Shown here one piece after another: positions 20,140 through 59,286 of a stretch of 64,000 nt of DNA. The DNA lies in assembly GCF_020745735.1 (NCBI RefSeq), contig NC_083409.1, positions 20,594,098 to 20,658,097 of the forward strand. Direction: 5' to 3'. The translations under genes were made by a program, and so were the position numbers. This DNA comes from Hemiscyllium ocellatum. Its lineage: Eukaryota. Under the pieces are notes generated by a model. It worked only from the letters and a program-made list of their open reading frames with translations. It had not been told where the DNA came from and made no database searches. The stretch's first letter is position 1; every line of letters starts with the position of its first letter.

Positions 20140-21140
20140 GAGTCGTAGAGATGGACAGCTCAGAAACAGACCCTTCGGTTCAACTTGTCCATACAGACCA
20201 GTTATCCGAGATAAAATCTAGTCCCATTTGCCAGCATTTGGTCCATTTCCTCTTTAACCCTTCCTATTCATATACACCACCAGATGCCTTTTAAATATCG
20301 CCATTATGCCAGCTGCCTCCACTTCCTCTGGCAACTCATTCCATGTACACACCACCCCCTGCATGAAACAGTAACCTGTTACGTACCTTTTAAATGTTTC
20401 CCTCTCACCTATGCCCTCTATTTTTGGAATTGCCTTCACCAGGGAAAAGACTTGTCTATTTACCCTGTCCATACCACTCATAATTTTATAAATCTTTTCA
20501 CATTCGCCTCTCAGCCTCTGGTGCTCCAGGGAATGTAACCCCAACCAATTCATTCTCTTCCTATACCAGAACCCCCCCACCCAGGCAACACCCTTGTAAA
20601 TCTTTGCATAACCCTTTCAAGATTCACAACATCCTTCCAAGAGCAGGGAGTCCAGAATTGCACAGAATATTCTAAAAGAGGCCTGATCAGTGTCCTATTC
20701 AGCTGCAACATGACCTCCCAACTCCTGTACTCAATGCTCTGACCAATAAAGGCAAACATACCAAACACCACCTTCACTATCCTGTTTACTTGTGACTCCA
20801 CTTTCAAGGAACTATGAACCTGCACTCCAAGGTCTCTTTGCTCAGCAACACTCCCCAGGACTTTACCATTGAGTGTATAAGTCCTGCCCTTATTTGCCTT
20901 TCCAAAATGCAGCACCTCACATTTATGTAAACTAAACTTCATCTGCCACTCCTCAGCCCATCTGAACAAGATCCTGTTGTATTCTGAACCTTCTTCACTG
21001 TCCACTGCACCTTCAATTTTGGTGTTATCTGCAAACTTACTAACCATACTATGTTCCATGTTCACATCCAAATCATTTATGTAAATGACGAAAAGCAGTG
21101 AACCCAGCACCGATCCTTGTGGCACACCACTGGTCACAGG
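20140..21140 (-). mobile_element. CR1-type LINE 3' ~1 kb
   Basis: ORF 20550-21137: VTSGVPQGSVLGSLLFVIYINDLD...SKFADNTK. Confidence 0.92.
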
Positions 21141-21419
21141 CCTCCTACTGGGAATGGTCAGTGACTGGCAGTTTTGTTCCGAATATTATTTGCCTCTTGC
21201 CAGTCCAAACCCACATATTGTCCAGATCCTGTTGCCTTTGAACATAACTCCTCAGATATTGAAACAGTCTATGAATGGTACTGAATATTGTGCGATCATC
21301 CGCACTTCTGACCTTAAGATGGAAGTAAGGTCAGGAACTGAGGAACCCCATTTTATTCTGATCCTCGAGGAAGCTCATTTTACTCCAAACTGGAGACACA
21401 ATGTAATAGCTCTGAGTGT

Positions 21420-33282: not shown

Positions 33283-33789
33283 ACCCCAGCCCCCCATCGG
33301 AATCCCCACATTACTGAACAGTACAAATAAACTGGGGCTCTGTGAGGATCTTTGGACCATGATATTGATCACACCACAATAAAAATGTCCTGCATGCTAT
33401 GGTTTTTCAAAAAAAGAAGTGCTTTGATAAGACTTTTGATTGTCTTCACGGTGTGCTGTTTTGTTCATTCTGTGATATGGATGGACAATGTCAGTATTGG
33501 GTATCACAAAGAATGGATCCTCCATCAAACACTTTCCAGCACACTCTCTCCATCTTGCTTTACTCCTTATCGTCTTTTTGACATTGTCCCTGTTCCCTCA
33601 CCCCGTCCCGGTCCCAGAGGGATTGATGGCTGGAGTTCATGACCTCACTCTGTGTGAAGGTTGGTGTGAAGTGAGGCCAGTGTGTTGGAGCTTGGGCCCC
33701 TGCCTCACGCCCAGGTGTAGGGGCCTGTTCAACAATCTGCACAATGTCCTTTTTCTCTTTCTGAATGAACTGGATCAAGTTGCAGTAAC

Positions 33790-34915
33790 GAGCTGGCAAC
33801 AAGGTGTCTTGTCTAAAATGTTCCCAGCATTGGATACAGAACTGGCTGAGTCAGAGGAAACAGAGGGCAGTGATGGGAGGATGGTTTTCAGAATGGAGGG
33901 CTGTGATTCCTAGTGTCCTACAGGGATCAGTGGTGGGAACTCTGCTGTATGTGGTCTACATAAATGATTTAGAGGAAAGTGTAGCCGGTCTAATTAAATG
34001 TTTACAGTTGATACAAAGATTGGTAGAGTTACAGATAATGAGAAGGATTGTCAGAGGGCACAGCAGGATATAGATCAGTTGGATGCATGGACAGATAAAT
34101 GGCAGATGTAGTTTAATCCAGACAAATGTAAGGTGATGCATTTTGAAAGGTGATGTACGGGTGGGAATTATACAGTGAATGTCAGAATCCTTTGGAGTAT
34201 TGATATGCAGAGGGTGTGTATGTTCACAGGTCACTGAGGGTGGCAGCTCAGGGAGGTAAGGTCGTGAAAAAGGCTTATGGCCTGCTTGCCTTCATTGGAA
34301 GAGGCATTAAGTATAAGGATAGACAAGTTATGCTGCAGCTTGTTGAACATTAGTTAGGCCACACTTGGAATATTGTATACAGTTCTGCTTGCCACACCAT
34401 CAGAAGGATGTGGATGTTTTGAAGATGGTGCAGAAAATGTTTACCAGAATATTGTCTGGTATGGGGGATTTTAGTTCTGAAGAAATGTTGGATAGACTGG
34501 GTTTGTTTTCACCAGAATGAGGGAAAATTAGGTGTGACCTCATAGAAGTTTATTAAGTTTTGAATGGCATAGGTAGGGTGGAAACTATGAAGCTTTTTCC
34601 CAGGATGGAGGGGTCACTTACTCGGGGACAGAGGTTCAAGGTGTGGGGGTAGGGGGGAATTTAAAAGAGATGTGCGAGGCTAGAATTTCACACAAAGGGA
34701 GTTGAGTACCTGGAACACACTACCATAGGAGGGGGTGGAAACAGACATGATAGAAGTATTCAAGAAATACCTGCACTAATGCATGAATAGGAAGGGAATA
34801 GAGGGATACAAATCCTGTAGGTGAAGATAGTTTCAGTATGGAAGGGCCAAATGTATCAGCACAGGCTTGAAGGGCTGAAGGACCTGTTCCTGTGCTGTAT
34901 TGTTCCTTGTTCTTT
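33790..34915 (+). mobile_element. CR1-type LINE 3' ~1.1 kb, abutting the ankyrin remnant
   Basis: WIQNWLSQRKQRAV, QGSVVGTLLYVVYINDL; CR1 tail. Confidence 0.88.
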
Positions 34916-34924
34916 GGTCCCTGC

Positions 34925-35295
34925 TGTTGAATTGGATTCTCGGGAGCCAGCTCCATATGAAGAGCCTGTTCTCATTCTTTTGTTGGAGTTCATGGGGCAG
35001 CTGCTGCTTCCTTGCTACGTCACTGATCAAACCAACAATGGGGAAAGACTCGTGATATTTTAAATACAGTCTGCAGGAAAATGTTTGGCCAAGGTTTTAA
35101 TATTGCTTAATAAGATAATGATGTCAAAACACCAGTGTTGTTTGCAGCTGAGAACAGTTAATATCATGGTCCAAGTTTTAAATGGACCCTCACTCGTGAT
35201 AATACAGTTTTCAATATTTCTCTCCCCTTACGTGTTGTGAAGAGGTTTGCAAACATGTTTTGATGAGGACAGTGCATCTTCAACACCGTATGACG
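34925..35295 (+). pseudogene. RNase L-like pseudogene: frameshifted ankyrin-repeat remnant (last repeats)
   Basis: Joining frames gives ILLLE-HGA...QWGKT...FNIA**DNDVKTPVLFAAEN...VL*RG...YD, aligning with remembered RNase L LLLDHGA...ERGKT...[20 protein letters not shown]...LCKRG...YD; stops and frameshifts throughout. Confidence 0.6.
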
Positions 35296-35546
35296 GAGCG
35301 GGCGGCTGTTTCAATTCTCACTTGTGATAATACAGTTTTAAATATGTCAGTGTTACTCTCTGGGGGAGTGTCACTGTCACTATCCCCACCTTTCATTCTC
35401 AGGGTGATATCATTTTTGGTATCCTTTCTGTCTGAGGATGTCCCTGTTCTTGTCCCCCACTCTCTCAGGGATGGGATGGGTATTTCACACGCACCTGGTT
35501 TGTTAGTTCCATTTGCTCTCTTGTGAAATGGGTAATCTCTGTTTTA

Positions 35547-35696
35547 GTAAAAAGTGAGGTCTGCAGATGCTGGAGATCAGAGCTGAAAATGTGTTGCCGG
35601 TTAAAGTACAGCAGGTTAGGCAGCATCCAAGGAACAGGAAATTCGACGTTTCGGGCCAGAGCACTTCATCAGGATGGCCCGAAGCATCGAATTTGC
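35547..35696. mobile_element. Penelope-like element with hammerhead core and short inverted tail, 14-bp TSD
   Basis: - strand CTGATGA-A-GTGC-TCTG-GCCC-GAAAC-GTC; TAATC(T/A)CTGTTTTA at 35533-35546 and 35697-35710. Confidence 0.78.
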
Positions 35697-36021
35697 TAAT
35701 CACTGTTTTACTCTGGTAACAGTGAGTTAAAGCCCAGTAGAGTTCACCCTTCATCTCTATCATATCTCAGGGCCTAAGGTTGGTCAGCACTGTCACGCTC
35801 CAGTACATCCCACCACTTCTCGCAATTTTCTCTCTTTCCTATCTTTACTGAACACCTTGTTTCCAGGAATCCCCAAGGCCAAAAATCATACGACACCAGA
35901 TTATAGTCCAACAGGTTTATTATAAGACACAAGCCTCGCCCCTTCTTCGGGTGAGCAGAGGAGCAAACAAGGTGAATTCAATCAACAGAGAAAACAAACT
36001 CTGTTGTTTGTTTCCTTCTCG

Positions 36022-36146
36022 GTTGACTCCGTTCTCCTAAATGACATGAACAAGAGACAAGGCAAGAATAAAGAATATAAGGACACCACCAGTGACGGCC
36101 TGAAATTCATAAGAAACCTCATCCAGCACTTTGATGAATAGAAAGA
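36022..36146 (+). pseudogene. RNASEL: RNase L-like pseudogene: KEN ribonuclease exon (VDSVLLNDMNKRQGKNKEYKDTTSDGLKFIRNLIQHFDE*K)
   Basis: Aligns with remembered human INECVMKKMNK...[23 protein letters not shown]; KFIRN is RNase L-like rather than IRE1-like; TAG at 36139-36141; pyrimidine tract ends in cg instead of ag; gtatgt donor in phase 2. Confidence 0.85.
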
Positions 36147-36542
36147 GTATGTGAACAATAGTTGCTGGCAATATTTTCCTGCTTTTTCAACTTTTAGCAT
36201 TGATTCAAAGCAGAAAGAGCCTTTCTTTCTCTTTCCCTCCTTGAAACTCTTACTGAGATGATCAAACCCAGCAACAGTTCATGTGACAGGTTGAGAGGAT
36301 TGTCTCGGGATCAAGAGGGGGACTGGGTGAGGAACGGGATTTATCCTCAGATTCTCTGGGAAGCTAGGAGGAGATTGCAGATCTCATCCCTGGAATTTAG
36401 AAGGTTGGGAGGAGATTTCACTGAAACATGTCAAATTCTCCAGGGACCTGACAGGACAGATTTTGGGAGGATCTGTCCCTACTTGGGAATTCTAAAGCAG
36501 AGACCCAGTCTGGGAATAAGGGGTTAGACGTTTGGCTCTCTG

Positions 36543-36820
36543 ATGTGGAATGGGTATCACAGTAGCTAGCACCACTGCCTGACAACACCAGGGACCTGGG
36601 TTCGATTCCACCCTCAGGCAACTGTCTGTGTGCAGTTTGCATGTTCTCCCCATGTCTGCGGGGGGTTCCTCTCTCAGTCCAAAGATGTGCAGGTTAGGTG
36701 GATCAGCCATGGGACATGTAAGGCTCCAGGGATAGGAGAGGGAGATGGCTGTGGGTGAGATGCTGCTTTGCCTTGATGGGCTGAACAGCCTTCTTCCACA
36801 CAGTAGGGATTTAATGATTC
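36543..36820 (+). mobile_element. HE1-type SINE, diverged
   Basis: B box GGTTCGATTCC and V-domain. Confidence 0.8.
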
Positions 36821-37169
36821 TTCATTGCTGTGGTCTGGAGTGATATGTTAGTTAGTATGACACCAGGACAGCAGTGTAAAGGACATTAGTGGGTTCGATG
36901 GGACTCTCCCCAAACAATTGTCATTATTAGAATCTTAATTTGAGATGTTAAAATTTGAATTCCACTTCGTGCCATTGCCAGGATTTGAACCCAGGTCCCC
37001 CAGAACATGACTTGGCTCGCTAGATTAACAATCTCGTGATGATACCACTAGGCCACTGCCTCCCCCCATGCAGGTGATCTCAATCTTGAATTTATTCAAA
37101 TTACTAAGTACTGACTAAGTATCTGGGAATGAGTATTCCAAAGATTCACAATCCACTGAGTGAAGAAAT

Positions 37170-37446
37170 CAATAGAATCCCTACAATGTGGAAACAGGCC
37201 ATTCAGCCCATACCGCCTCTCCAAAGAGCATCCCAACCAGACCCACTCCCCTATAACCTTGCATTGCCCATGGCCATTCCAACGATCCCACACATTTTGG
37301 ACTGTGGGAGGAAACCAGATCACCTGGAGGGAACCCAGGCAGACACAGGAGAATATGTAAACACCACAAAATCAGCTGCCTGAGGGTGGAATCGAACTCA
37401 GGTCCCTACGCTGTGAGGCAACAGTGCTAGTCTCTGTGCCACCCCA
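37170..37446 (-). mobile_element. HE1-type SINE
   Basis: Reverse complement of consensus. Confidence 0.8.
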
Positions 37447-37479
37447 CTTGATTCTGGGCAAAAAATGCTGGCATACCAT

Positions 37480-37975
37480 GTGATGCCCAAACCTGTAAAT
37501 AAATTAAGAAAAGATCAGTAAAGCTTTGAATAGGAGTGTGATGGGTTACTCCCCACATGCCTGGATGGGCGCAGCTCCAAAAACAGTCAAGAAGCTTGAT
37601 ATCATCCAGTACAAAGCAGCCTGTTTGATTGGCACTACATCTACAAACATTCACTCCCTCCACCACTGATGCTCAGTAGCAGCCGCGTGCACCATCGACA
37701 AGATGCACTGCAGAAATCCACCAAGTCTCCTGAGACAGCACCTTCCAAACCCAAGGCCATTCCCATTTGAAGGACAAGGGCAGCAGATACACAGAATACC
37801 ACCACTCTCAAGTTCCACTCTAATCAATATAGCATCCTGATTTCAAAATATACTACTGTTCCTTCAGTGTCGCTGGGTCAAAATCCTGGACTACCCTCCC
37901 TTAGGGCATTGTGGGTTTATCTACAGCACATGGACTGCAGCGGTTCAAGAAGGCAACTCACGACCACCTTGCAAA
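37480..37975 (+). mobile_element. L2/CR1-superclade LINE 3' end
   Basis: IQYKAACLIGTTSTNIHSLHH*CSVAAACTIDKMHCRN. Confidence 0.72.
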
Positions 37976-37983
37976 GGGCAGCA

Positions 37984-38310
37984 TTGTGGGTCAGTGGTTA
38001 GTGCTGCTCCCTCGCAGCGCCAGGAACCTGGGTTCAATTCCACCCTGGGATGATGTCTGTCTGGAGTTTACACATTTTCCCCATGTCTGAGTGAGTTTCC
38101 TCCACACAATCCATAGATGTGTAGGTTTGGTGGATTAGCCATGCTAAATTGCACGTAGTGTCCAGGGATGTGCAGGCAGGGTGGATTAGCCATGGGAAAT
38201 GCAGCATTACAGGGATGGGGCTGATCTAGATGGGATGCTGTTTGGTCGGATGCTGTGAAGTTGATGGGCTGAATGGTCTGCTTCCACACCATATAATGAT
38301 TCTATGATTC
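37984..38310 (+). mobile_element. HE1-type SINE, diverged
   Basis: Consensus match. Confidence 0.8.
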
Positions 38311-38419
38311 TCAAGGGCAACTAGGAATCTGACCCATGTCCTCCAAGTGAGTTTTAAACAAAAACACCATCTTCACCACTTACTATTCCATCAGTCTTTG
38401 TGTCAATGTGGAACTATGA

Positions 38420-39330
38420 TTCTCATTAATAAATACAGTAAGTAGTTAAGGCCTCACCACAGAATCCTTGTGGAACACCACTCGTCACTTTCTTTCTCTG
38501 TTATCTATCACTAAACCAGCCTCCGAACCAAGTCAAACATTCATCTTCAATCCCATGGGTTTTAACTTTGGTCAGCAGACTGTTTTGTGGTAAATGATCG
38601 AGTACTTTTGAAAGTTGATAAGCCTATACATCCGATCAACTATTTTATTTAATGCATTTGGTTTGTTAGTTAGAACTTACCCATCACAAATCTACATGGG
38701 CTATTTCCGATTCTCTACATGTTGATTCTCTCGGCTGTTAATTATAGATTCCAATGAAACCCCTAAAAGAGATGTTAGATTGACCAGGATATAATTTCCT
38801 TGGTTCCCTCTCTCATCTTTCTTCAACCCGTGGTGTTACAGCAAGACATTTTCCAAACTAAAGGAATCGTTATTGCTTTGGAACCTGATGGGAAAAAAAC
38901 CTCTGAAACTTTCTCCCCCCCTTCCTTTAAACCCCTAAGGTCCTGGAGATCTGTCAGCCTTTAGAGCCGCTCATTTTCCAATGTTGTTTCATGGCAAGTA
39001 TCAAGTTTCGTGAATTCCAGTCTTCCATTCATTATTAACCTCCCTGGAATGGAAGCTGCATTATCCCGTTCCTTGACTGTAAAGACTGACACAACTAATT
39101 ATTGTACGTATCGGCCATTCCCTTTGTCTCATTCATGGAATTCCCAGTTTGTTTTTAAAGGGCTCACATTGCACTGGAGCCTCCTTGATTTTCTAATTTT
39201 CGTGTAAAGCATTTGTGTTATTCTTGTGACCCCTTGCAGGTCTCTTTCTCAATCACCTTTTTGTACCTCTTTTTTCCTTTCTGTCTTCCTTTGCAGTTCT
39301 TCATATCTTCCTTCAGTTGCCTGAATTCTC
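38420..39330 (-). mobile_element. Old CR1-type LINE fragment
   Basis: gtgacgagtggtgttccacaagg on - strand, decayed. Confidence 0.6.
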
Positions 39331-39879
39331 ACTGATATTCCCACATTTGAGTGTTCTCGTTGTTAGTTTTCTGTGTTCTCCCCTTATTTTGTCAGTGATG
39401 ATGTGTTAACAAGTGGGGACCTGTTCCATACTGAGCTGAATACACTTTAACCATCTCCCCATCTCATTGGGAGTCTGATCTGACAAATGTGGCTGACATC
39501 AATCTCTGTTGCATTCTGTTTTCTGGGAGGTGGGTGTCACTGGCGTAGATCAGCATTTGTTACCCTAGACTAATTGCCCTTGAACTGCTGGCCTTGCTGT
39601 GGCCTCTCAGAAGGCACCTGAGAGTTAACCAGATTGCTGTGGGGCTGGAGTCACATGAAGTCCAGACTGGGTAAGGCTGAGGCTGGACAGCATTCAGGGA
39701 TCATTATCGTGGTCACCATTAATGAGGCTTGCTTTGTGATTTGAATTCAAATTCCAGCATTTGTCACTGGAGGAGATAGTACAGTTTGATAGATTGTGGC
39801 AGGACCTCTGTTTTGTATCTCACCTGAAAGACAACAGCTCCCTCAGTTTTGCAGTGTCAGCCTTGACTGTGTGCTCAAC

Positions 39880-41400
39880 ATAGGAATTAGGAGCGGGAGG
39901 AGGCAATTCAGCCCTTCGACCCCGCTCCGCCATTTAACAGGACCATGGCTGATCTTATCCTGGTCTCAACTCCACTCTCCTGCCTGCTTCCCATTGTTCT
40001 TTATCTCATGTTTAATCAGAAACACATCGTTCTTGAACCTGTTGATTGATTCTGCCTCCACTGCACTCTGGGGCATTGAGTTTCACAGATTCACAACCCT
40101 CTGGGAGAAGTAGTTTCTCCTCAGCTCAGTTTTGAACCGACCTCCTCTCACTCGATATCGATCCCCTCTTGTTCCAGACTGTCCCACAAGGGGGAGCATC
40201 TATTCAATATCCACCTTCTCAATCCCCTTTCACATTTTCTATCCCTCAATCAGATCCCTCCTCATTCTTTTAAACTCCAGTGAGTCCAAGCCCAAGCTGT
40301 TTAACTGCTCCTCGTGGGACAGCCCTTTCATCCCTGGAATCAGTCTGGGGAACATCCTCGGAACGGCCTCCAGTGCCACCACATCCTTCCTCAAATGGTG
40401 TTAGGTATAAGGGAATGGGTTTGTGTGGTTTGCTCTTGGGAGGGTCAGTGTGGACTTGTTGGATCGAGGGGCCTGTTTCCATACTGTAAGTAATCTAATC
40501 TAATAAGCAGACCACAATTGGACACAAGACTGCAGTTGTGTCTCACCAATGCCTTCCATATGTTCCAGTTTGTAATGTATGATAAATGCGTGTTCAGATG
40601 GGCCAATGGACAAGGAGTGGGAGATGGAGTTTAATTTAGATAAGTGTAAGGCATTGCTTTTTGGGAAGGCAAATCAGGGCAGGTTCCTGGAGAGTGTTGC
40701 TCAGCAACGAAATCTTGGAGTGCAGGCTCCCAGTTCCTTGAAAGCCATGGATAGACAGGGTAGTGACGAAGGTGATTGGTACGCTTGCCTTTATTGGTCT
40801 GTGCATTGAGTATAGGAGTTGGGATGTCATGTTCTGGCTGTCCACCAAAGTGGCCATTGGTGAGGACACCTTGAGAATACAGGGCTCAGTTCGGGTCTTC
40901 CTGCGAAAGGAATAATGTTTTTAAACTTGAAAGGGGACAAAAAAAGATTTGCAAGGATGTTGCTGGGGTTGGAGGGTTTGAGCTACAGGGAGAGGCTGAA
41001 TAGATTGGGGCTACTTTCCCTGGAGTGTTGGAGGTTGAGGGGTGAACTTATGGAGGTTTATAAAATCATGAGGGGCATCGATAAGGTGAACATCCAAGGT
41101 CTTTTTCCCAGGGTATGTCAGTCCAAAACTAGAGGATATAGGTTTAAGGTAATAGAGGAAGAATTTGTAAGGGAACTAAGGGGCAACTTTTCATGCAGAG
41201 GATGGTGCATGCACGGAATGAGCTGCCAGGGGAAGTGGTGGAAGCTGGTACAATTACATCATTTATATGGGTCCATGAATAGGAAGGGTTTAGAGGGATA
41301 TGGACCAAATCATGGCAAATGGAACTAGATTAGGATGTCTGGTTGGCACGGATGAGTTGAACCGAAGGGTCTGTTTCGTGCTGAATGACTCTCTGAGTAA
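39880..41400. mobile_element. Two adjacent CR1 3' fragments (- then +)
   Basis: RT C-terminal motifs on both strands. Confidence 0.8.
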
Positions 41401-41716
41401 GACATTATTTTAAATAGTCAAAGCTTCTGAGACAGAGGTGACAGTGCTCCCACTGACCAGGTTCCAGTTTGTACAGGGCTCCGCTCTCAGCTGGATGGTT
41501 GGGAGTTGGAGCTGATTTTAAGCTGTATTTTGGAGAGGAGTAAGCAACCTTTTTGATCAAAGCCTCCTGAAATGTGAAGGTGACATTTATGAGCAATTCA
41601 GAGCAATGATCTACTCGGTTATTTTGACTCCTGGGGCCTGCTGAGTACTAAAACTCAGCATTTAGGGATTGCTGAGAAATATCTTCATTGACTTGGACGT
41701 TAATTGTACTTTTCAG

Positions 41717-41837
41717 GTTCCACAGTTTAATGAAGAGTCCAGAAGATTATAGCTTTGGGTTATTTCCCGATCTCATTGTTGCTGTCTACAAGGCTGTGAA
41801 GGACACAGAGTGGAAGAAGTACTTTCCAAAAGAATAG
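41717..41837 (+). pseudogene. RNASEL: RNase L-like pseudogene: terminal exon (FHSLMKSPEDYSFGLFPDLIVAVYKAVKDTEWKKYFPKE*)
   Basis: tttcag acceptor in the phase required by the 36146 donor; aligns with remembered [31 protein letters not shown]; frame open to TAG. Confidence 0.85.
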
Positions 41838-41934
41838 AGGCTGCTCCTGTCTTCAAAGGGTTGCCATCTCTTGAGTGGATATGAGACAGAACCACATGCT
41901 TCAGGGCTAGAATGGAAAGAAGGAACTTACATTT

Positions 41935-42266
41935 GTATCACAGAATCCCTATAGTGTGGAAGTAGGTCATTCAGCCTATCGAGTCCACACCACCCCTCCA
42001 AAGAACATTCCATCCAGACCCCGATGCTATCCCTGTATTTTCCAATGGCTAATCCACCTAGCCTGCTCATTCCTGGACACTATAGGCAATTTAGCATGGC
42101 CAGTTTACCAGCCTGCAGATCTTTAGGACCGTGGGAGGAAACCAGAGCACCCGGGGGAAGCCCACACAGACACAGGGAGAACGTGCAAACTCCACACAGA
42201 CCTGTCTGAGGCGGGTCCCTGACGCTGTGAGGCAGCAGTGCCAACCACTGAGCCATCGTGCCACCC
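41935..42266 (-). mobile_element. HE1-type SINE
   Basis: Reverse complement of consensus. Confidence 0.82.
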
Positions 42267-42554
42267 CAAATGTATTGCACATTTTGTCACCAGAGGATGT
42301 TCCAAAGCATTTTACTGATAGAGATGTGGGTTTGGAACATGAATAAGGTTACATTTGTGCCACACAGCTGCCAGGCAATGACTGTCTCCAACAAGAGAGA
42401 ATGTAACTATCTTGCCTTGATGTTCAGTAGCTGTGTGCTGTGTGAACACATTACCTTTAAGAAAATCCACCCCTGTGTATGTACGGTGTTGAACTCTACC
42501 CACCAGTTAGTCATCTGTGAGCCTGCAAGCTGCACAGACCAAGATCAATTCGCT

Positions 42555-42862
42555 GAATCCCTACAGTGTGGAAATAGGCCTCCACACTGACCCTCCAAAG
42601 AGCATCCCACTCCCCCACCCCATTACTCTACATATTCCCTGACTACTGCACCTAATCCACACACCCCTGAACACCATGGACAATTTAGTTTGGCCAATTC
42701 ACCGAACCTGCACATCTTTTGACTGTGGGAAGAAACCGGAGCATCCAGGGGAAACCCACAGAGACACGGGGAGAATGTGCAAACTCCAAACAGACAGTTG
42801 CCCGAGGCTGGAACGAACCTGGGTCCCTGGTGCTGTGGGACAGCAGTGCTGACCACTGAGCC
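42555..42862 (-). mobile_element. HE1-type SINE
   Basis: Reverse complement of consensus. Confidence 0.82.
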
Positions 42863-43099
42863 TCAGTGCAGTCCATTCTTGCTTGCTGTAATGTCTGCTT
42901 CATGATTTGTAATGTGTTTTATTGCTTTAACTAAATTAACTTACAAAGTTAATGGATTGATTATGGGACCATTATCTTAACCATATCATGGTGAAAGGCT
43001 GGAGAAAACACTGTACAGATGAGGCCTATTGCACAAGCAGCTTAATCTGCAGGTAGAAAATACAAATGACAGTCTTCGATTGTGTGAAAGTGTATGAGG

Positions 43100-43600
43100 C
43101 AACATATGGGCAAGGAACAAAAGTAGGCCACTCGGTCCTTATGGCTGATCTGATTTTAACCTCAACTCTACATTCTCTGATAACATTTCATCCCTTCAGT
43201 CATCAAGAATCTATCTATGGTCATGGCTGAACATTGAGCACTACACTGTAATCCCTCCCTACCCCATATCCCTTGAATCTTTAGCCACAAGAGCTATCTC
43301 TACCCTCTTCTTGAAAACATAATGTTTTGGCCTCAACAACTTTCTGTGACAGCGAATTCCATAGGCTCACCACTTTTTTCCTCATCTCTGTCCTATAGAG
43401 TTTACCCCTTAACCTTAAACTATGAGCCCTGGTTCTGGACTTCCCCACCATTTGGAACATCCTTCCTCCATCTAACATGTCTCGTCCTGTTCCAATTTTA
43501 TAGCTTTCTACAAGATTCCCTTCCTTCATTCTTCTAAACTCCAATGAACACAATCCTCACCAACTCAACCTCTCTTTATACATCAGTCCTGCCATCACAG
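43100..43600 (-). mobile_element. CR1-type LINE 3' fragment
   Basis: SLEFRRMKEGNL...YRTEMRKKVVSLWNSL. Confidence 0.8.
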
Positions 43601-44544
43601 AAATCAAATGGCATTCAGTAATTAACATTAATCACCTCATTATGGAAGACAGACTTTGAAGGTCAGGGTGAGAGGACAATCATTGCCAGTTCTAAAATTC
43701 AGGCTTCTGTTGCCGTAAGCTCAATGGAATCATTGTATACAATCTGACAACAGCAGAAAGATGGGAGGTGTGGATGGAGGGTGCAGACAGCGGTGTAGAC
43801 AGTGGGTTTGGACACAGGGTGTAAACGGAGGGTGCAGACGGTGTGTATAGACAGTGGCATCGACAGAAGATGCAGATGCTGGGTGCAGACTGTGCTGCAG
43901 CCAGTAGTATAAACATGAGCAAAACTTTGCGTGGTGACCAGACGAGTGGCTGTGTGGAATCACACAGAGAGCAGTCAGTGAGCCTGACACAGTCAGGGAC
44001 ACCTGCTGGTGCTGAAGGCCATGCTGCTGCTGGCAAAGGTCGCATTTCATCTGAAACTGTACTCGCTCCCTACACACTCCCCTCTTGTCCCCATATGCCT
44101 CACTACAACCCCTGGAGATGCCAACCAGCACTCTGTGCCCTCACTCAGTCTCCATTGGCCTTGTCTCCATTAGCCTTGACGCTCCTCCCAAGCTCCTACT
44201 TGGGCCACCACTGAAGCTTGAACCATTTCCTCTGACCCTTGATCATGCATTTGCCACCTTCGACAGGCTATACTAATCACCATTAACCTGCACAGCCCTC
44301 TCAGCATGGATACAGCATAGAAAAGGCCCTTCGGCCCATTGAGTCTGCATGAACATAATTACAACTGAAGGCACTTTCATCCCAATTTCCTGCCGTTGTC
44401 CCAAATCCATGAATGTTATGATATTCAAGGGTTGTAAGGTATCTACCCTCCACTACCTTCCCTGACAGAGGGTTGTGAGTTTATAGTTTGTATCACATCA
44501 GACTCATGGAGCTGAATGAAAGCTCAACTCTTTGGGCTTTTTTA

Positions 44545-44884
44545 TGGGTGGCATGGTGGCTCAGTGGTTAGTACTGCTGTCTCACAGCACTAGGGACCCG
44601 GGTCGATTCCAGCCCCACGTATCTGTGTGGAGTTTGCACATTCTCCCCGTGTCTGTGTGTTTTTCCTCTGTATGCCCCAGTTTCCTCCCACAATCCAAAG
44701 ATGTGCAGCTTAGGTGAATTGGCCATGCTAAAATTGCCCATAGTGTTCAGGGATGTGTTAGTTAGGTGTGTTAGTCAGGGGAAATAGCCAAGGGGAGTGG
44801 ATCTAGGGTGAATTTCTCTTCAGAGGATTGGTCGGGACTTGTTGCACCAAATGGCCTGTTTCCACACTGTAGGGATTCTATGAC
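44545..44884 (+). mobile_element. HE1-type SINE
   Basis: Consensus match. Confidence 0.82.
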
Positions 44885-45292
44885 AGTCCATTCCAGATTC
44901 CCACCACAGTCTGAGTGAAAGAGGTTCTTTCCCAAATCTCATTTGCGATGTTCGTAAAGGAATCTTTCAAACCATTCATATTGTTCAGTGTCCTTTAGCT
45001 CTTGCACGCCTTGTTCGATAAAGTGTTTTTTTTTTTATGATAAAATATGAGTTCCCTGATGGGGTTTAACCTTGTCCAATCAGGGAGCCCCGGCTGACAG
45101 ATAAAAAGGGGAGTGTCAGAAGGACTGATACTCTGGTACCTGACTCTGAATAACAACCTGCCAACCATCCCCCTCCTTCTGTCACCCTCAATCTCCTCAT
45201 GCTTACTCTTGATACCCCTTCAATCCAGCTTGTGCTGCCTTTGGGAGAAGTTGACCTTCCCTCCATCACCCAGCAACGTGGTCATCATCCCT

Positions 45293-45598
45293 GCTAGCAC
45301 TGCTGCCTCACAGCGCCAGGTTCCCAGGTTCGATTCCAGCCTCGGGTGAATGTCTGTGTGGAGTTTGCACATTCTCCCTGTGTCTGCCTGGGTTTCCTCC
45401 GGGTGCCCTGGTTTCCTCCCACAGTCCAAAAATGCGCAAATCAGGTGAATTGGCCATGCTAAATTGCCCATAGTGTTAGGTGCATTAGTCAGAGGGAAAT
45501 GGGTCGGGTGGGTTTCTGTTTGGAGGGTCGGTGTGGATTGGTTGGGTCGAAAGGCCTGTTTCCACACTGTAGGTAATCTAATCTAATCTAATCTAATC
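45293..45598 (+). mobile_element. HE1-type SINE with (AATCT)n tail
   Basis: Consensus match, head slightly truncated. Confidence 0.85.
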
Positions 45599-46059
45599 CC
45601 AGAAGAGCATAGTCCCACTCACTCATTACAGACAGAGCCAAATGGTGGTGAGTTTAATCCAAGGGTCACCACAGCTGAGGCAGGGGGAGAGAAGGTGGCA
45701 CCTTCATGTTAGTCGTACCCTTCATTAATCCACTGCAACCCCCCTTGGGGCTGCAAGAATTCAACCACCCTCGTTCAGACAGCTCCCCTCTCTGTAAGGT
45801 AATATTACTGCACATAGTGTAGAGCTAATTGACCATTGAAATATGACTATGGGTAGTCAGCACTGGCTGGGCAGGCAGCCACTACTGCAATGACCCTGGA
45901 TCCAGAAAATCCCCTTGTAATCAGGCAACACATTAGGGAGCACAGTGCCCACTGCCTTTGAAATCCCTCCCTTACTGAGAACACACTCTCAATATTCACC
46001 TTTCTCAGTTGCCATCTCAATTTCACTGTAAATTCTGTCAACTATGATCCTGCCCCACT

Positions 46060-47775: not shown

Positions 47776-48104
47776 CTACACACATTCTGATCTCCTTATG
47801 CTCTTGCTGAGGGGAGAGGGGAGGGTCACGTGGGTGAGGGCACAGGAGAAGCGAGCGTTGGACTCCCAGTCAGACCCAGAGAGGGTCAGCAGGCTGCTGA
47901 CACTGTAGGTGCTGTCCGAAGCTCGCAGGTAGTTGCTGGTCTGAACCCCGTCCGAAATGACTGCACCGTCCTTCTTCCACTGCACCTCCAGCTCATCGGG
48001 ATAGAAGTGATTGGCAAGGCACACCAGGGTGGCAGTGCCCTTGGCATTGACCTGCTCCAGGGAGGGGGGCAGCAGGGTCAGCTTGGGCTGAGAGTTCTCA
48101 CGGC
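47776..48104 (-). pseudogene. Ig light-chain constant exon, shark type I/NS5 (sigma-cart) class; ORF intact, splice acceptor mutated
   Basis: RENSQPKLTLLPPSLEQVNAKGTATLVCLANHFYPDELEVQWKKDG...YSVSSLLTL...FSCALTH...SECV*; pyrimidine tract ends tttctG|GC (TG instead of AG). Confidence 0.93.
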
Positions 48105-48779
48105 CAGAAAGACAAAAGAAACAATTTTAATCCCTGCCATTTGAAGAAACTTCAACTCTCAGAACATTCACTGGTAAAATGTTTGAACATTTGTATCCAA
48201 TACCTACCAAACCCGACAAAAAAAAACAAGTATTGTTTAAATTGTTTCTTGGGAGTGAGTGTCACGAGCAGGGCCAGCATTTATTTCTCATCCGTAATTG
48301 CCCTGAAAAGGTGATGGGGAAAGACAAGGAACAGTTTTGGACTCTTGTTTAGGAAATGAATGTGGGCAGCTGGAAGGGCTCTCAATGGGGGACCAGTTTA
48401 GTGACAGTGATCAGAACTCAGTGAGATTGAGAGTAGGGATGGAAATGGAGAACCATGCAGCAAGTGTTAACGTTTTCACTTGGGAATGAATTATTTTACT
48501 AAACTGTGCGATAATTTAGTAAAAGTGGACTGGAACCAACGCCATCATGTGAAATCAGTGTCAGGGCAGTGGGATCCCTCAAAAGAAAAGACAGAGATTG
48601 TTCAGAATCTGTTCCCACAATGAGTAAGGGTGGGACTCCCTAATCTAGACTCTCAGCCTGGGATGTCAAAAGGCAGCCAGAGTAGGGAAGACCAAACAGG
48701 GAAGGTGATGTTGGTTATCTGGAGTTATCTGCAGAAAGCCCAGAGGAGGATTGGAAATGCAGGGGTGGCATTGAACAGG

Positions 48780-58812: not shown

Positions 58813-59100
58813 AAGGCCAGCTGTAATGCTGCTGACAGTCATAGTCAGCAACATTCTCATTCTGAATGTTGCTGATTGTCAGGGTGAAACTGGTCCCTGA
58901 TCCACTGCCGGTGAATTGCTCGGAGACTCCTGTGAGTTGAGTTGCTGCATTGTAGATCGGGAGAGAGGGTTTCTGACCTTCTCGCTACTGGTACCAAGCA
59001 AGGTAGCTGCTCATGGCCGTACAGATGATGGTTACGGTTTGTCCCAGTCCGACTGACAGCAGTGGGGGAGACTGGGTCATGATGATGTCCTCACTGATAC
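58813..59100 (-). pseudogene. Ig light-chain V exon, type I/NS5 class, premature stop
   Basis: [48 protein letters not shown]...[34 protein letters not shown]; TAG at 58985-58987; CDR1 about 3 codons short; ccctcag acceptor. Confidence 0.95.
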
Positions 59101-59286
59101 CTGAGGGCTCAGAGAGAAACACAGTGAAGTCAGAACTTTCACAGAAAGAGCCTGTCAAATGAGAGATTGTTGGAGACACTGAGCATTCCTCTGGTTTCAG
59201 CATTTTCCCTTCAATCACAAGTCAGTGGAATTGGAGTGAAATGGAGAGCAGCGAAAGATTCAAGGTGGAAGGAGAGAGATTTGTAC

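What the first reader, a model, noticed from the sequence alone, without database searches (positions are those of the whole stretch)
34925..41837. Hidden RNase L-like pseudogene: two KEN-ribonuclease exons in matching phase plus ankyrin remnants
Seen: exon 36022-36146 encodes YKDTTSDGLKFIRNLIQH and joins in phase 2 to exon 41717-41837 (LFPDLIVAVYKAVKDTEWKKYFP*). Frameshifted ankyrin motifs lie at 34925-35295. None of this is in the ORF track. Known: these match the RNase L nuclease domain, including positions equivalent to D661, R667 and H672, and as I recall the last two introns of human RNASEL have the same positions and phases; RNase L is the OAS/2-5A antiviral effector, reported in chondrichthyans and tetrapods but not teleosts. 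Inference: a formerly functional shark RNase L-family gene, now dead (TAG at 36139, acceptor ag>cg). The open last exon suggests the loss is not ancient.
Basis: partly seen in the sequence, partly recalled or inferred. Interest (0 to 1): 0.8.

Follow-up and report, generated by a model that had tools for sequence, protein, structure and literature searches.

The report
Dead RNase L tail fragment
The two exons are real leftovers of the shark antiviral RNase L gene, but only the last two exons and the downstream DNA were copied, next to an antibody light-chain gene, so this is an ordinary dead gene fragment.

Summary
The two exons exist exactly where stated. Window 36022-36146 and 41717-41837 (+) match the last two coding exons of bamboo-shark RNase L base for base (78/80 residues vs Chiloscyllium punctatum, 79/80 vs C. 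plagiosum). Their intron positions and phases also match a mammalian RNASEL. The lesions are real: acceptor AG>CG at 36020, Leu>Gly beside the catalytic Asp, and AAG>TAG at 36139.

The "ankyrin remnants" at 34925-35295 are not supported by Pfam, tblastn or DNA similarity to the ankyrin exon.

Homology to the C. punctatum RNase L locus begins inside intron 5, at window 35807. It runs through both exons and at least 4 kb of 3' flank. Nothing of exons 1-5 lies in the 35.8 kb upstream. The tail faces an open Ig light-chain C exon (47779-48126, minus strand) 5.9 kb away.

C. punctatum carries another, shorter RNase L tail fragment. This scan has already noted about a dozen such tails on other DNA of the same chromosome, and follow-ups read them as hitch-hikers of duplicated Ig light-chain clusters.

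So this is a truncated duplicate, most likely dead from birth, not a formerly complete gene. The open last exon says nothing about age. Ordinary; low interest.

The parts
35807..36021 (+). Remnant of the 3' part of RNase L intron 5. Homology to the parent locus begins here. It ends in CG (36020-36021) where the functional gene has the AG acceptor.
   Evidence: blastn: window 35807-35873 matches L001 36714-36780 (91%), and 35874 onward matches L001 37241 onward. L001 has TCTAG|GTTGAC where the window has TCTCG|GTTGAC.
36022..36146 (+). Copy of the penultimate coding exon of RNase L (KEN domain, with the catalytic Asp/Arg/His motif). Lesions: CTC>GGC (Leu>Gly) at 36097-36098, and AAG>TAG in-frame stop at 36139-36141. 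The donor GTATGT at 36147 is intact.
   Evidence: Pfam PF06479 positions 44-78; PDB RNase L only; tblastn P0081 E 1.8e-18; 4 of 125 nt differ from L001 37398-37522.
36147..41716 (+). Retained last intron (5570 bp), with SINE and LINE fragments. The polypyrimidine tract and AG acceptor at 41715-41716 are intact.
   Evidence: Collinear blastn blocks to the last intron of L001 on both sides of its N gap; LINE-type ORF at 40864-41325.
41717..41837 (+). Copy of the last coding exon of RNase L. It is open, ends in the native TAG stop (41835-41837), and its protein sequence is identical to the C. plagiosum RNase L tail.
   Evidence: Pfam PF06479 positions 96-125; PDB RNase L E 0.0024; best of 1.84 billion representatives is Mustelus RNase L, E 1.6e-11; tblastn P0081 E 2.8e-19; tails compared.
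41838..45954 (+). 3' UTR and 3' flank co-duplicated with the exons. Homology continues to the very end of the comparison locus, so the true end of the copied unit is unknown.
   Evidence: blastn: window 41104-45111 matches L001 42275-46215 (84.3%), and 45100-45954 matches L001 49916-50766 (89.1%). Substitution-only divergence is 10-11%.
47779..48126 (-). Open Ig light-chain constant (C1-set) exon. It is convergent (tail-to-tail) with the RNase L tail, 5.9 kb from its stop codon, and is the likely partner in the duplicated unit.
   Evidence: Pfam C1-set E 8.8e-22; antibody chains in the PDB. The cassette idea comes from scan notes. The geometry was tested here; joint duplication is inferred.

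Best explanation
This is an unprocessed, truncated duplicate of the 3' end of the hemiscylliid (bamboo/epaulette shark) RNase L gene. It holds the end of intron 5, the last two coding exons with their intron, and at least 4 kb of 3' flank. It lies tail-to-tail with an Ig light-chain cluster. It was most likely copied as a passenger when the neighbouring light-chain cluster was duplicated. Lacking a promoter, ankyrin repeats, pseudokinase and the first third of the KEN domain, it could never make an RNase L. It has since drifted (acceptor AG>CG, Leu>Gly, Lys>stop).

Shown: identity and borders of the exons, the lesions, the homology boundary, the absence of upstream exons, and the convergent Ig C exon.

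Inferred: co-duplication with the Ig cluster, and that the copy was truncated at birth rather than later.
For: Exon identity:
- Exon identity and borders were set.
- The tail nests inside the hemiscylliid RNase L clade (98/96 support) with a 0.013 end branch.
- Identity is 78/80 to C. punctatum and 79/80 to C. plagiosum.

Truncation:
- Homology to the functional C. punctatum locus L001 starts at window 35807, inside intron 5, and runs to the end of L001.
- No hit to exons 1-5 or their introns appears anywhere in the window, by tblastn or sensitive blastn.
- Intact hemiscylliid RNase L genes span only 20-33 kb.

Paralogy rather than an allele: flanks differ by 8-16% (non-CpG), exons by about 2%.

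Other fragments:
- C. punctatum contig L002 carries a last-exon-only copy. It is 89.8% identical to the window and 87.2% to L001, and its homology starts 165 bp before the exon.
- Scan notes list about a dozen RNase L tails among Ig light-chain clusters on this chromosome.
- Here the tail faces an Ig C1-set exon 5.9 kb away.
Against: - The exons and their near flanks (3-7%) are less diverged from the functional gene than the distal flanks (8-16%). That could mean past constraint or gene conversion. But the two dead copies (window and L002) show the same low divergence around the last exon: 4.75% against 16% in the adjacent SINE. Local rate differences therefore suffice.
- The species of the window is coded, so paralogy to L001 rests on the scan notes, on L002, and on intact RNase L being annotated in all three hemiscylliids.
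- The 3' end of the copied unit and its junction with the Ig cluster could not be checked, because L001 ends 7.8 kb past the stop.
Confidence: 0.85

Rival explanations
1. One reading: a once complete and functional RNase L paralogue that later lost its 5' exons by deletion or rearrangement, and then picked up the stop and the splice-site change.
For: Exons differ from the functional gene by about 2-3% against 8-16% in the distal flanks. The donor, branch region and last acceptor are intact. The last exon has no change of its own relative to the inferred ancestral protein.
Against: There is no trace of exons 1-5 or the ankyrin exon in 35.8 kb upstream, and the ankyrin claim failed. Low divergence around the last exon is also seen between two dead copies. 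An open 39-codon exon is expected by chance. Many similarly truncated tails are reported on the chromosome, and one exists in C. punctatum.
Confidence: 0.08
2. The fragment is still used: either transcribed as part of a non-coding or chimeric RNA, or kept as a donor or recipient of gene conversion with the functional RNase L gene.
For: There is a low-divergence island of about 500 bp around the last exon (41421-41950, 3.5% against 11-16% on either side). L002 shares the C. punctatum-specific Asn codon with that species' functional gene. RNA-like runs hold 11-19% of the words of 41600-42500.
Against: The words held by RNA-like runs can come from the functional gene's mRNA (68-76-nt perfect stretches) or from the SINE. 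The low-divergence island is explained by unique versus SINE DNA rates. No promoter or upstream exon is in sight. Nothing was laid.
Confidence: 0.05
3. It is the orthologue of the functional RNase L in an orectolobiform species outside the Hemiscylliidae, where the gene has died (species-level loss of RNase L).
For: The species of the window is coded. No whale-shark or zebra-shark RNase L appeared among the 75 homologues. 8-16% flank divergence could be an inter-family distance.
Against: The tail protein is 99% identical to C. plagiosum, and the end branch sits inside the hemiscylliid clade. About a dozen tails are reported on the same chromosome, so most must be paralogues. The run pattern of organism A fits the epaulette-shark pedigree data set, and that species has an intact RNase L.
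Confidence: 0.02

Closest known systems
RNase L (2-5A-dependent ribonuclease) of hemiscylliid sharks, e.g. C. punctatum XP_072429490 / GCC19658 and C. plagiosum XP_043555869
   Same: The last two coding exons are 97-99% identical in protein. The exon borders, intron phase, stop codon, and the 3' UTR and flank are the same.
   Different: It lacks exons 1-5 (ankyrin repeats, pseudokinase, first third of KEN). It carries a premature stop, a Leu>Gly change next to the catalytic Asp, and a lost acceptor.
C. punctatum contig BEZZ01055574.1 (hypothetical protein chiPu_0025276, partial): another RNase L tail fragment
   Same: It is a truncated copy of the RNase L 3' end, outside the functional gene, at about 10% DNA divergence.
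   Different: It holds only the last exon (homology starts 165 bp upstream of it). Its exon is open but has FP>TA and D>N changes.
RNase L tail / Ig light-chain cluster cassettes noted elsewhere on this chromosome by this scan (s1-228436, s1-213621, s1-213623, s1-228427 and others)
   Same: The last exon or exons of RNase L are cut off from the rest of the gene, broken, and lie beside or convergent with an Ig light-chain C exon.
   Different: Those stretches could not be read here, so identity, breakpoints and copy relationships are untested. In this copy the neighbouring C exon is open.
IRE1 (ERN1/ERN2) KEN domain
   Same: It belongs to the same Pfam family, PF06479.
   Different: IRE1 did not appear among the PDB matches at E up to 10, whereas RNase L did. 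The copy sits inside the shark RNase L clade.

Membership tests
RNase L (functional gene) | N-terminal ankyrin repeats that bind 2-5A | tested here: not met
   No ankyrin hit in Pfam for 34800-35420 on either strand. No tblastn or blastn match to the ankyrin exon anywhere in the window.
RNase L (functional gene) | Pseudokinase domain | tested here: not met
   tblastn with P0001 and P0081 finds no kinase-region match at E up to 10.
RNase L (functional gene) | Complete KEN (PF06479) domain in an open frame | tested here: not met
   Only profile positions 44-125 of 127 are present. There is an in-frame TAG at 36139.
RNase L (by descent) | Closer to RNase L than to IRE1 or other KEN proteins | tested here: met
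   PDB matches are RNase L only. Identity to hemiscylliid RNase L is 97-99%. Clade support is 98/96.
RNase L (by descent) | Conserved positions and phases of the last two introns | tested here: met
   Phase 0 before VDSV and phase 2 inside the Glu codon, identical to C. punctatum L001 and to colugo RNASEL L003.
Unprocessed duplicated pseudogene fragment | Introns and flanks of the parent gene retained; intact parent known; disabling lesions; truncation | tested here: met
   Collinear intron and flank homology at 84-90%. The parent gene is intact in three hemiscylliids. Lesions are shown. The homology boundary is at 35807.
RNase L tail / Ig light-chain cluster cassette (scan notes) | Tail-to-tail arrangement with an Ig light-chain C exon | tested here: met
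   The RNase L stop is at 41835-41837 (+). The C1-set exon is at 47779-48126 (-), E 8.8e-22.
RNase L tail / Ig light-chain cluster cassette (scan notes) | Many copies sharing one breakpoint, in several species | tested here: inconclusive
   One further copy was found in C. punctatum, with a different breakpoint. Other copies are known only from unchecked scan notes. No shark genome could be searched.

The most novel reading that the evidence does not exclude
The dozen or more RNase L tail copies scattered through the Ig light-chain array are not inert. They may exchange sequence with the functional RNase L gene by gene conversion. Hints are the low-divergence island around the last exon, and the species-specific Asn codon shared by the functional gene and a dead fragment in C. 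punctatum. If so, they would form a reservoir of KEN-domain variants for an antiviral gene under arms-race selection.
Probability: 0.05. Interest if true: 0.5.

Novelty: new member of a known kind. Interest (0 to 1): 0.15.

Why it matters
It matters little by itself. It removes a false lead: there is no hidden or recently lost RNase L gene here, and no ankyrin remnant. It adds one well-mapped copy, with exact breakpoints and lesions, to a family of RNase L tail fragments that hitch-hiked with shark Ig light-chain cluster duplications. Such fragments can mislead gene counts and presence/absence calls for the OAS-RNase L pathway in cartilaginous fishes. They could also serve as markers for dating light-chain cluster duplications.

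Tried and rejected
There is therefore no read-level check of the stop codon, of expression, or of the lesions in related species.
- The species could not be named. Run organisms are coded. An Ig C-exon protein search gave only mislabelled or distant hits.
- Exact-protein look-ups of window ORFs (the exon 6 ORF, the exon 7 ORF, a LINE ORF) found nothing on record.
- The supplement of the OAS-RNase L evolution paper is not held.
- I first read the 2-3% exon divergence against 8-16% flank divergence as evidence for long constraint or gene conversion. I rejected this as unproven after the three-way comparison showed the same pattern between two dead copies.
- Chance match, IRE1 origin, transposon protein and processed retrocopy were all rejected (the intron is retained).
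Full report
**Observation.** Window 36022-36146 (+) reads VDSVLLNDMNKRQGKNKEYKDTTSDGLKFIRNLIQHFDE, then TAG, then AAA GA. It is followed by a good donor (GTATGT). Window 41717-41837 (+) follows a pyrimidine tract and AG. With the leading G completing the split codon, it reads FHSLMKSPEDYSFGLFPDLIVAVYKAVKDTEWKKYFPKE, then TAG.

Each piece alone hits only Pfam PF06479 (Ribonuc_2-5A), at collinear profile positions 44-78 and 96-125 of 127. In the PDB each piece matches RNase L and nothing else of note, and no IRE1. A search of 1.84 billion representative proteins with the last exon returned one real relative: the C-terminus of an 811-aa protein (E 1.6e-11). Its source names it 2-5A-dependent ribonuclease-like of Mustelus asterias.

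**Closest relatives.** Among 75 RNase L homologues, the window's 80 residues are 78/80 identical to Chiloscyllium punctatum RNase L. Identity is 80% to Heterodontus, about 70% to carcharhiniform and lamniform sharks, about 52% to rays, and about 40% to chimaera and tetrapods. The 90% cluster holds C. punctatum, C. plagiosum and Hemiscyllium ocellatum. The C. plagiosum tail differs from the window only at the Leu>Gly site and the stop. In a maximum-likelihood tree the window sits inside this hemiscylliid clade (98/96) with an end branch of 0.013. The RNase L origin is secure.

**Gene structure.** Genomic DNA of the functional C. punctatum gene was obtained (L001, contig BEZZ01001581.1). Exact spliced mapping gives introns at TNVLR|D (phase 1), KADVQ|A (0), LWKNL|D (2), KWTEK|V (0) and FDEKK|E (2). 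Colugo RNASEL (L003) has introns at the homologous places with the same phases. The window's exons equal L001 37398-37522 and 42896-43016 to the base.

Against L001 the window has:
- A>C at 36020, which destroys the acceptor AG
- a synonymous CTC>CTA at 36039
- CTC>GGC (Leu>Gly, next to the catalytic Asp) at 36097-36098
- AAG>TAG at 36139
- in the last exon, AGT for AAT (the window keeps the Ser seen in other sharks; Asn is specific to C. punctatum)
- two synonymous differences in the last exon

**The ankyrin claim.** The "ankyrin remnants" failed every test.
- Pfam found no ankyrin family in any stop-free piece of at least 20 aa from 34800-35420, on either strand, at E up to 10.
- tblastn with Mustelus and Chiloscyllium RNase L at E up to 10 found only the two exons.
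- Sensitive blastn found no similarity in the window to the 1.7-kb ankyrin/kinase exon of L001, nor to exons 3-5 and the unique parts of their introns.

Since the rest of the copy is 84-90% identical to L001, a co-derived ankyrin exon would have been seen.

**Extent of the copy.** Collinear homology to L001 begins at window 35807 (L001 36714, inside intron 5). It skips a 460-bp stretch present only in L001, then covers exon 6 and the intron up to L001's N gap. It resumes at 41104, covers the last exon, and continues through the 3' flank to the very end of L001 (window about 45954). The 35.8 kb upstream holds LINE and SINE debris and nothing of RNase L. Intact hemiscylliid RNase L genes span only 20-33 kb. 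The copy is thus a 3' fragment. It is unprocessed, because the intron is retained.

**Divergence.** Excluding CpG contexts, the window differs from L001 as follows:
- about 2% in the exons
- 3-7% within a few hundred bases of them
- 8-16% further out, mostly in SINE/LINE-derived DNA

I first took this for long-lasting constraint or gene conversion. A second C. punctatum contig then turned up (L002, annotated chiPu_0025276). It carries only the last exon, with homology starting 165 bp upstream. It is 89.8% identical to the window and 87.2% to L001. In the three-way alignment, the unique DNA around the last exon is little diverged for every pair, including the two dead copies (window-L002 4.75%). 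The adjacent SINE is 14-18% diverged for every pair. Local rate differences (decayed CpGs in repeats) therefore explain most of the pattern, and no past function of this copy needs to be assumed. An open 39-codon exon is expected by chance with P = 0.68-0.93, so it does not date the loss.

**Context.** This scan has already found the same thing on other DNA of this genome. About a dozen notes place RNase L tails between 14.9 Mb before and 3.6 Mb beyond this window. Four follow-ups read them as the last exon or exons of RNase L, carried along when a neighbouring Ig light-chain cluster was duplicated. These notes are unchecked leads.

What I could test here fits them. The RNase L tail (+) faces an open Ig C1-set exon on the minus strand at 47779-48126 (Pfam E 8.8e-22), 5.9 kb beyond its stop. 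The DNA homologous to the RNase L 3' flank runs towards that exon. The existence of L002 shows independently that tail fragments occur outside the functional gene in a related species.

**Species.** Run organisms are coded. The protein tree points to a hemiscylliid. The pattern of runs for organism A (one genome sample plus several resequenced individuals in 2023) fits the epaulette-shark pedigree study, but this is circumstantial. All three hemiscylliids with annotation have an intact RNase L, so the pathway itself is not lost in this group. RNase L is known from cartilaginous fishes and tetrapods and is absent from ray-finned fishes, and chimaera RNase L is functionally coupled to OAS (PMC10400998).

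**Mechanism and verdict.** The most likely history is as follows. The functional RNase L gene lies (or lay) convergent with an Ig light-chain cluster. Duplication units of that cluster reached into the RNase L gene as far as intron 5. The copied tail had no promoter and no upstream exons, and it has drifted, collecting a splice-site change, a missense change and a nonsense change.

I give this 0.85. The alternatives are:
- a once complete paralogue that lost its 5' part: 0.08
- residual use (RNA, or gene conversion partner): 0.05
- a species-level loss in a non-hemiscylliid: 0.02

**Not done.** The finding is real but ordinary.

Noticed in passing
window 47779-48126 (-), 58814-59221 (-): There is an open Ig light-chain C1-set exon (Pfam E 8.8e-22). 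About 10.7 kb upstream on the same strand are V-exon pieces (weak V-set hit, with a stop between two pieces). This is the cluster of scan note s1-237831. Other notes call the neighbouring clusters kappa, while that note calls this one sigma-cart; the isotype was not checked.
   Followed up: partly
proteins P0086, P0087: The closest database proteins to the window's Ig C exon (85% and 79% identity) are filed as Aeromonas veronii and Salmonella enterica proteins on contigs of 507 and 990 bp. This is almost certainly shark DNA contaminating bacterial assemblies.
   Followed up: no
L002:211-331 (C. punctatum BEZZ01055574.1): This last-exon-only RNase L fragment is annotated as a hypothetical protein. 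It shares the Asn codon (AAT) otherwise specific to the C. punctatum functional gene, whereas C. plagiosum, H. ocellatum and the window have Ser. That hints at gene conversion or parallel change.
   Followed up: partly
(homologue list): No RNase L protein of whale shark or zebra shark appeared among the 75 homologues, although many other annotated elasmobranchs did. This could be an annotation gap or a real loss in that clade.
   Followed up: no
window 35873/35874 vs L001:36781-37240: A 460-bp stretch of unique sequence in intron 5 of the functional C. punctatum gene is absent from the window copy. Whether it is a deletion here or an insertion there is unknown.
   Followed up: no
window 20553-21185 (-), 33789-34520 (+), 40864-41325 (+): These are LINE reverse-transcriptase / C-terminal fragments with the recurrent LERVQ..FTR..PG...YRERL..LGL.SLE.RR.RGDL motif. 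The third lies in the last RNase L intron and is shared with L001, so it predates the duplication.
   Followed up: partly
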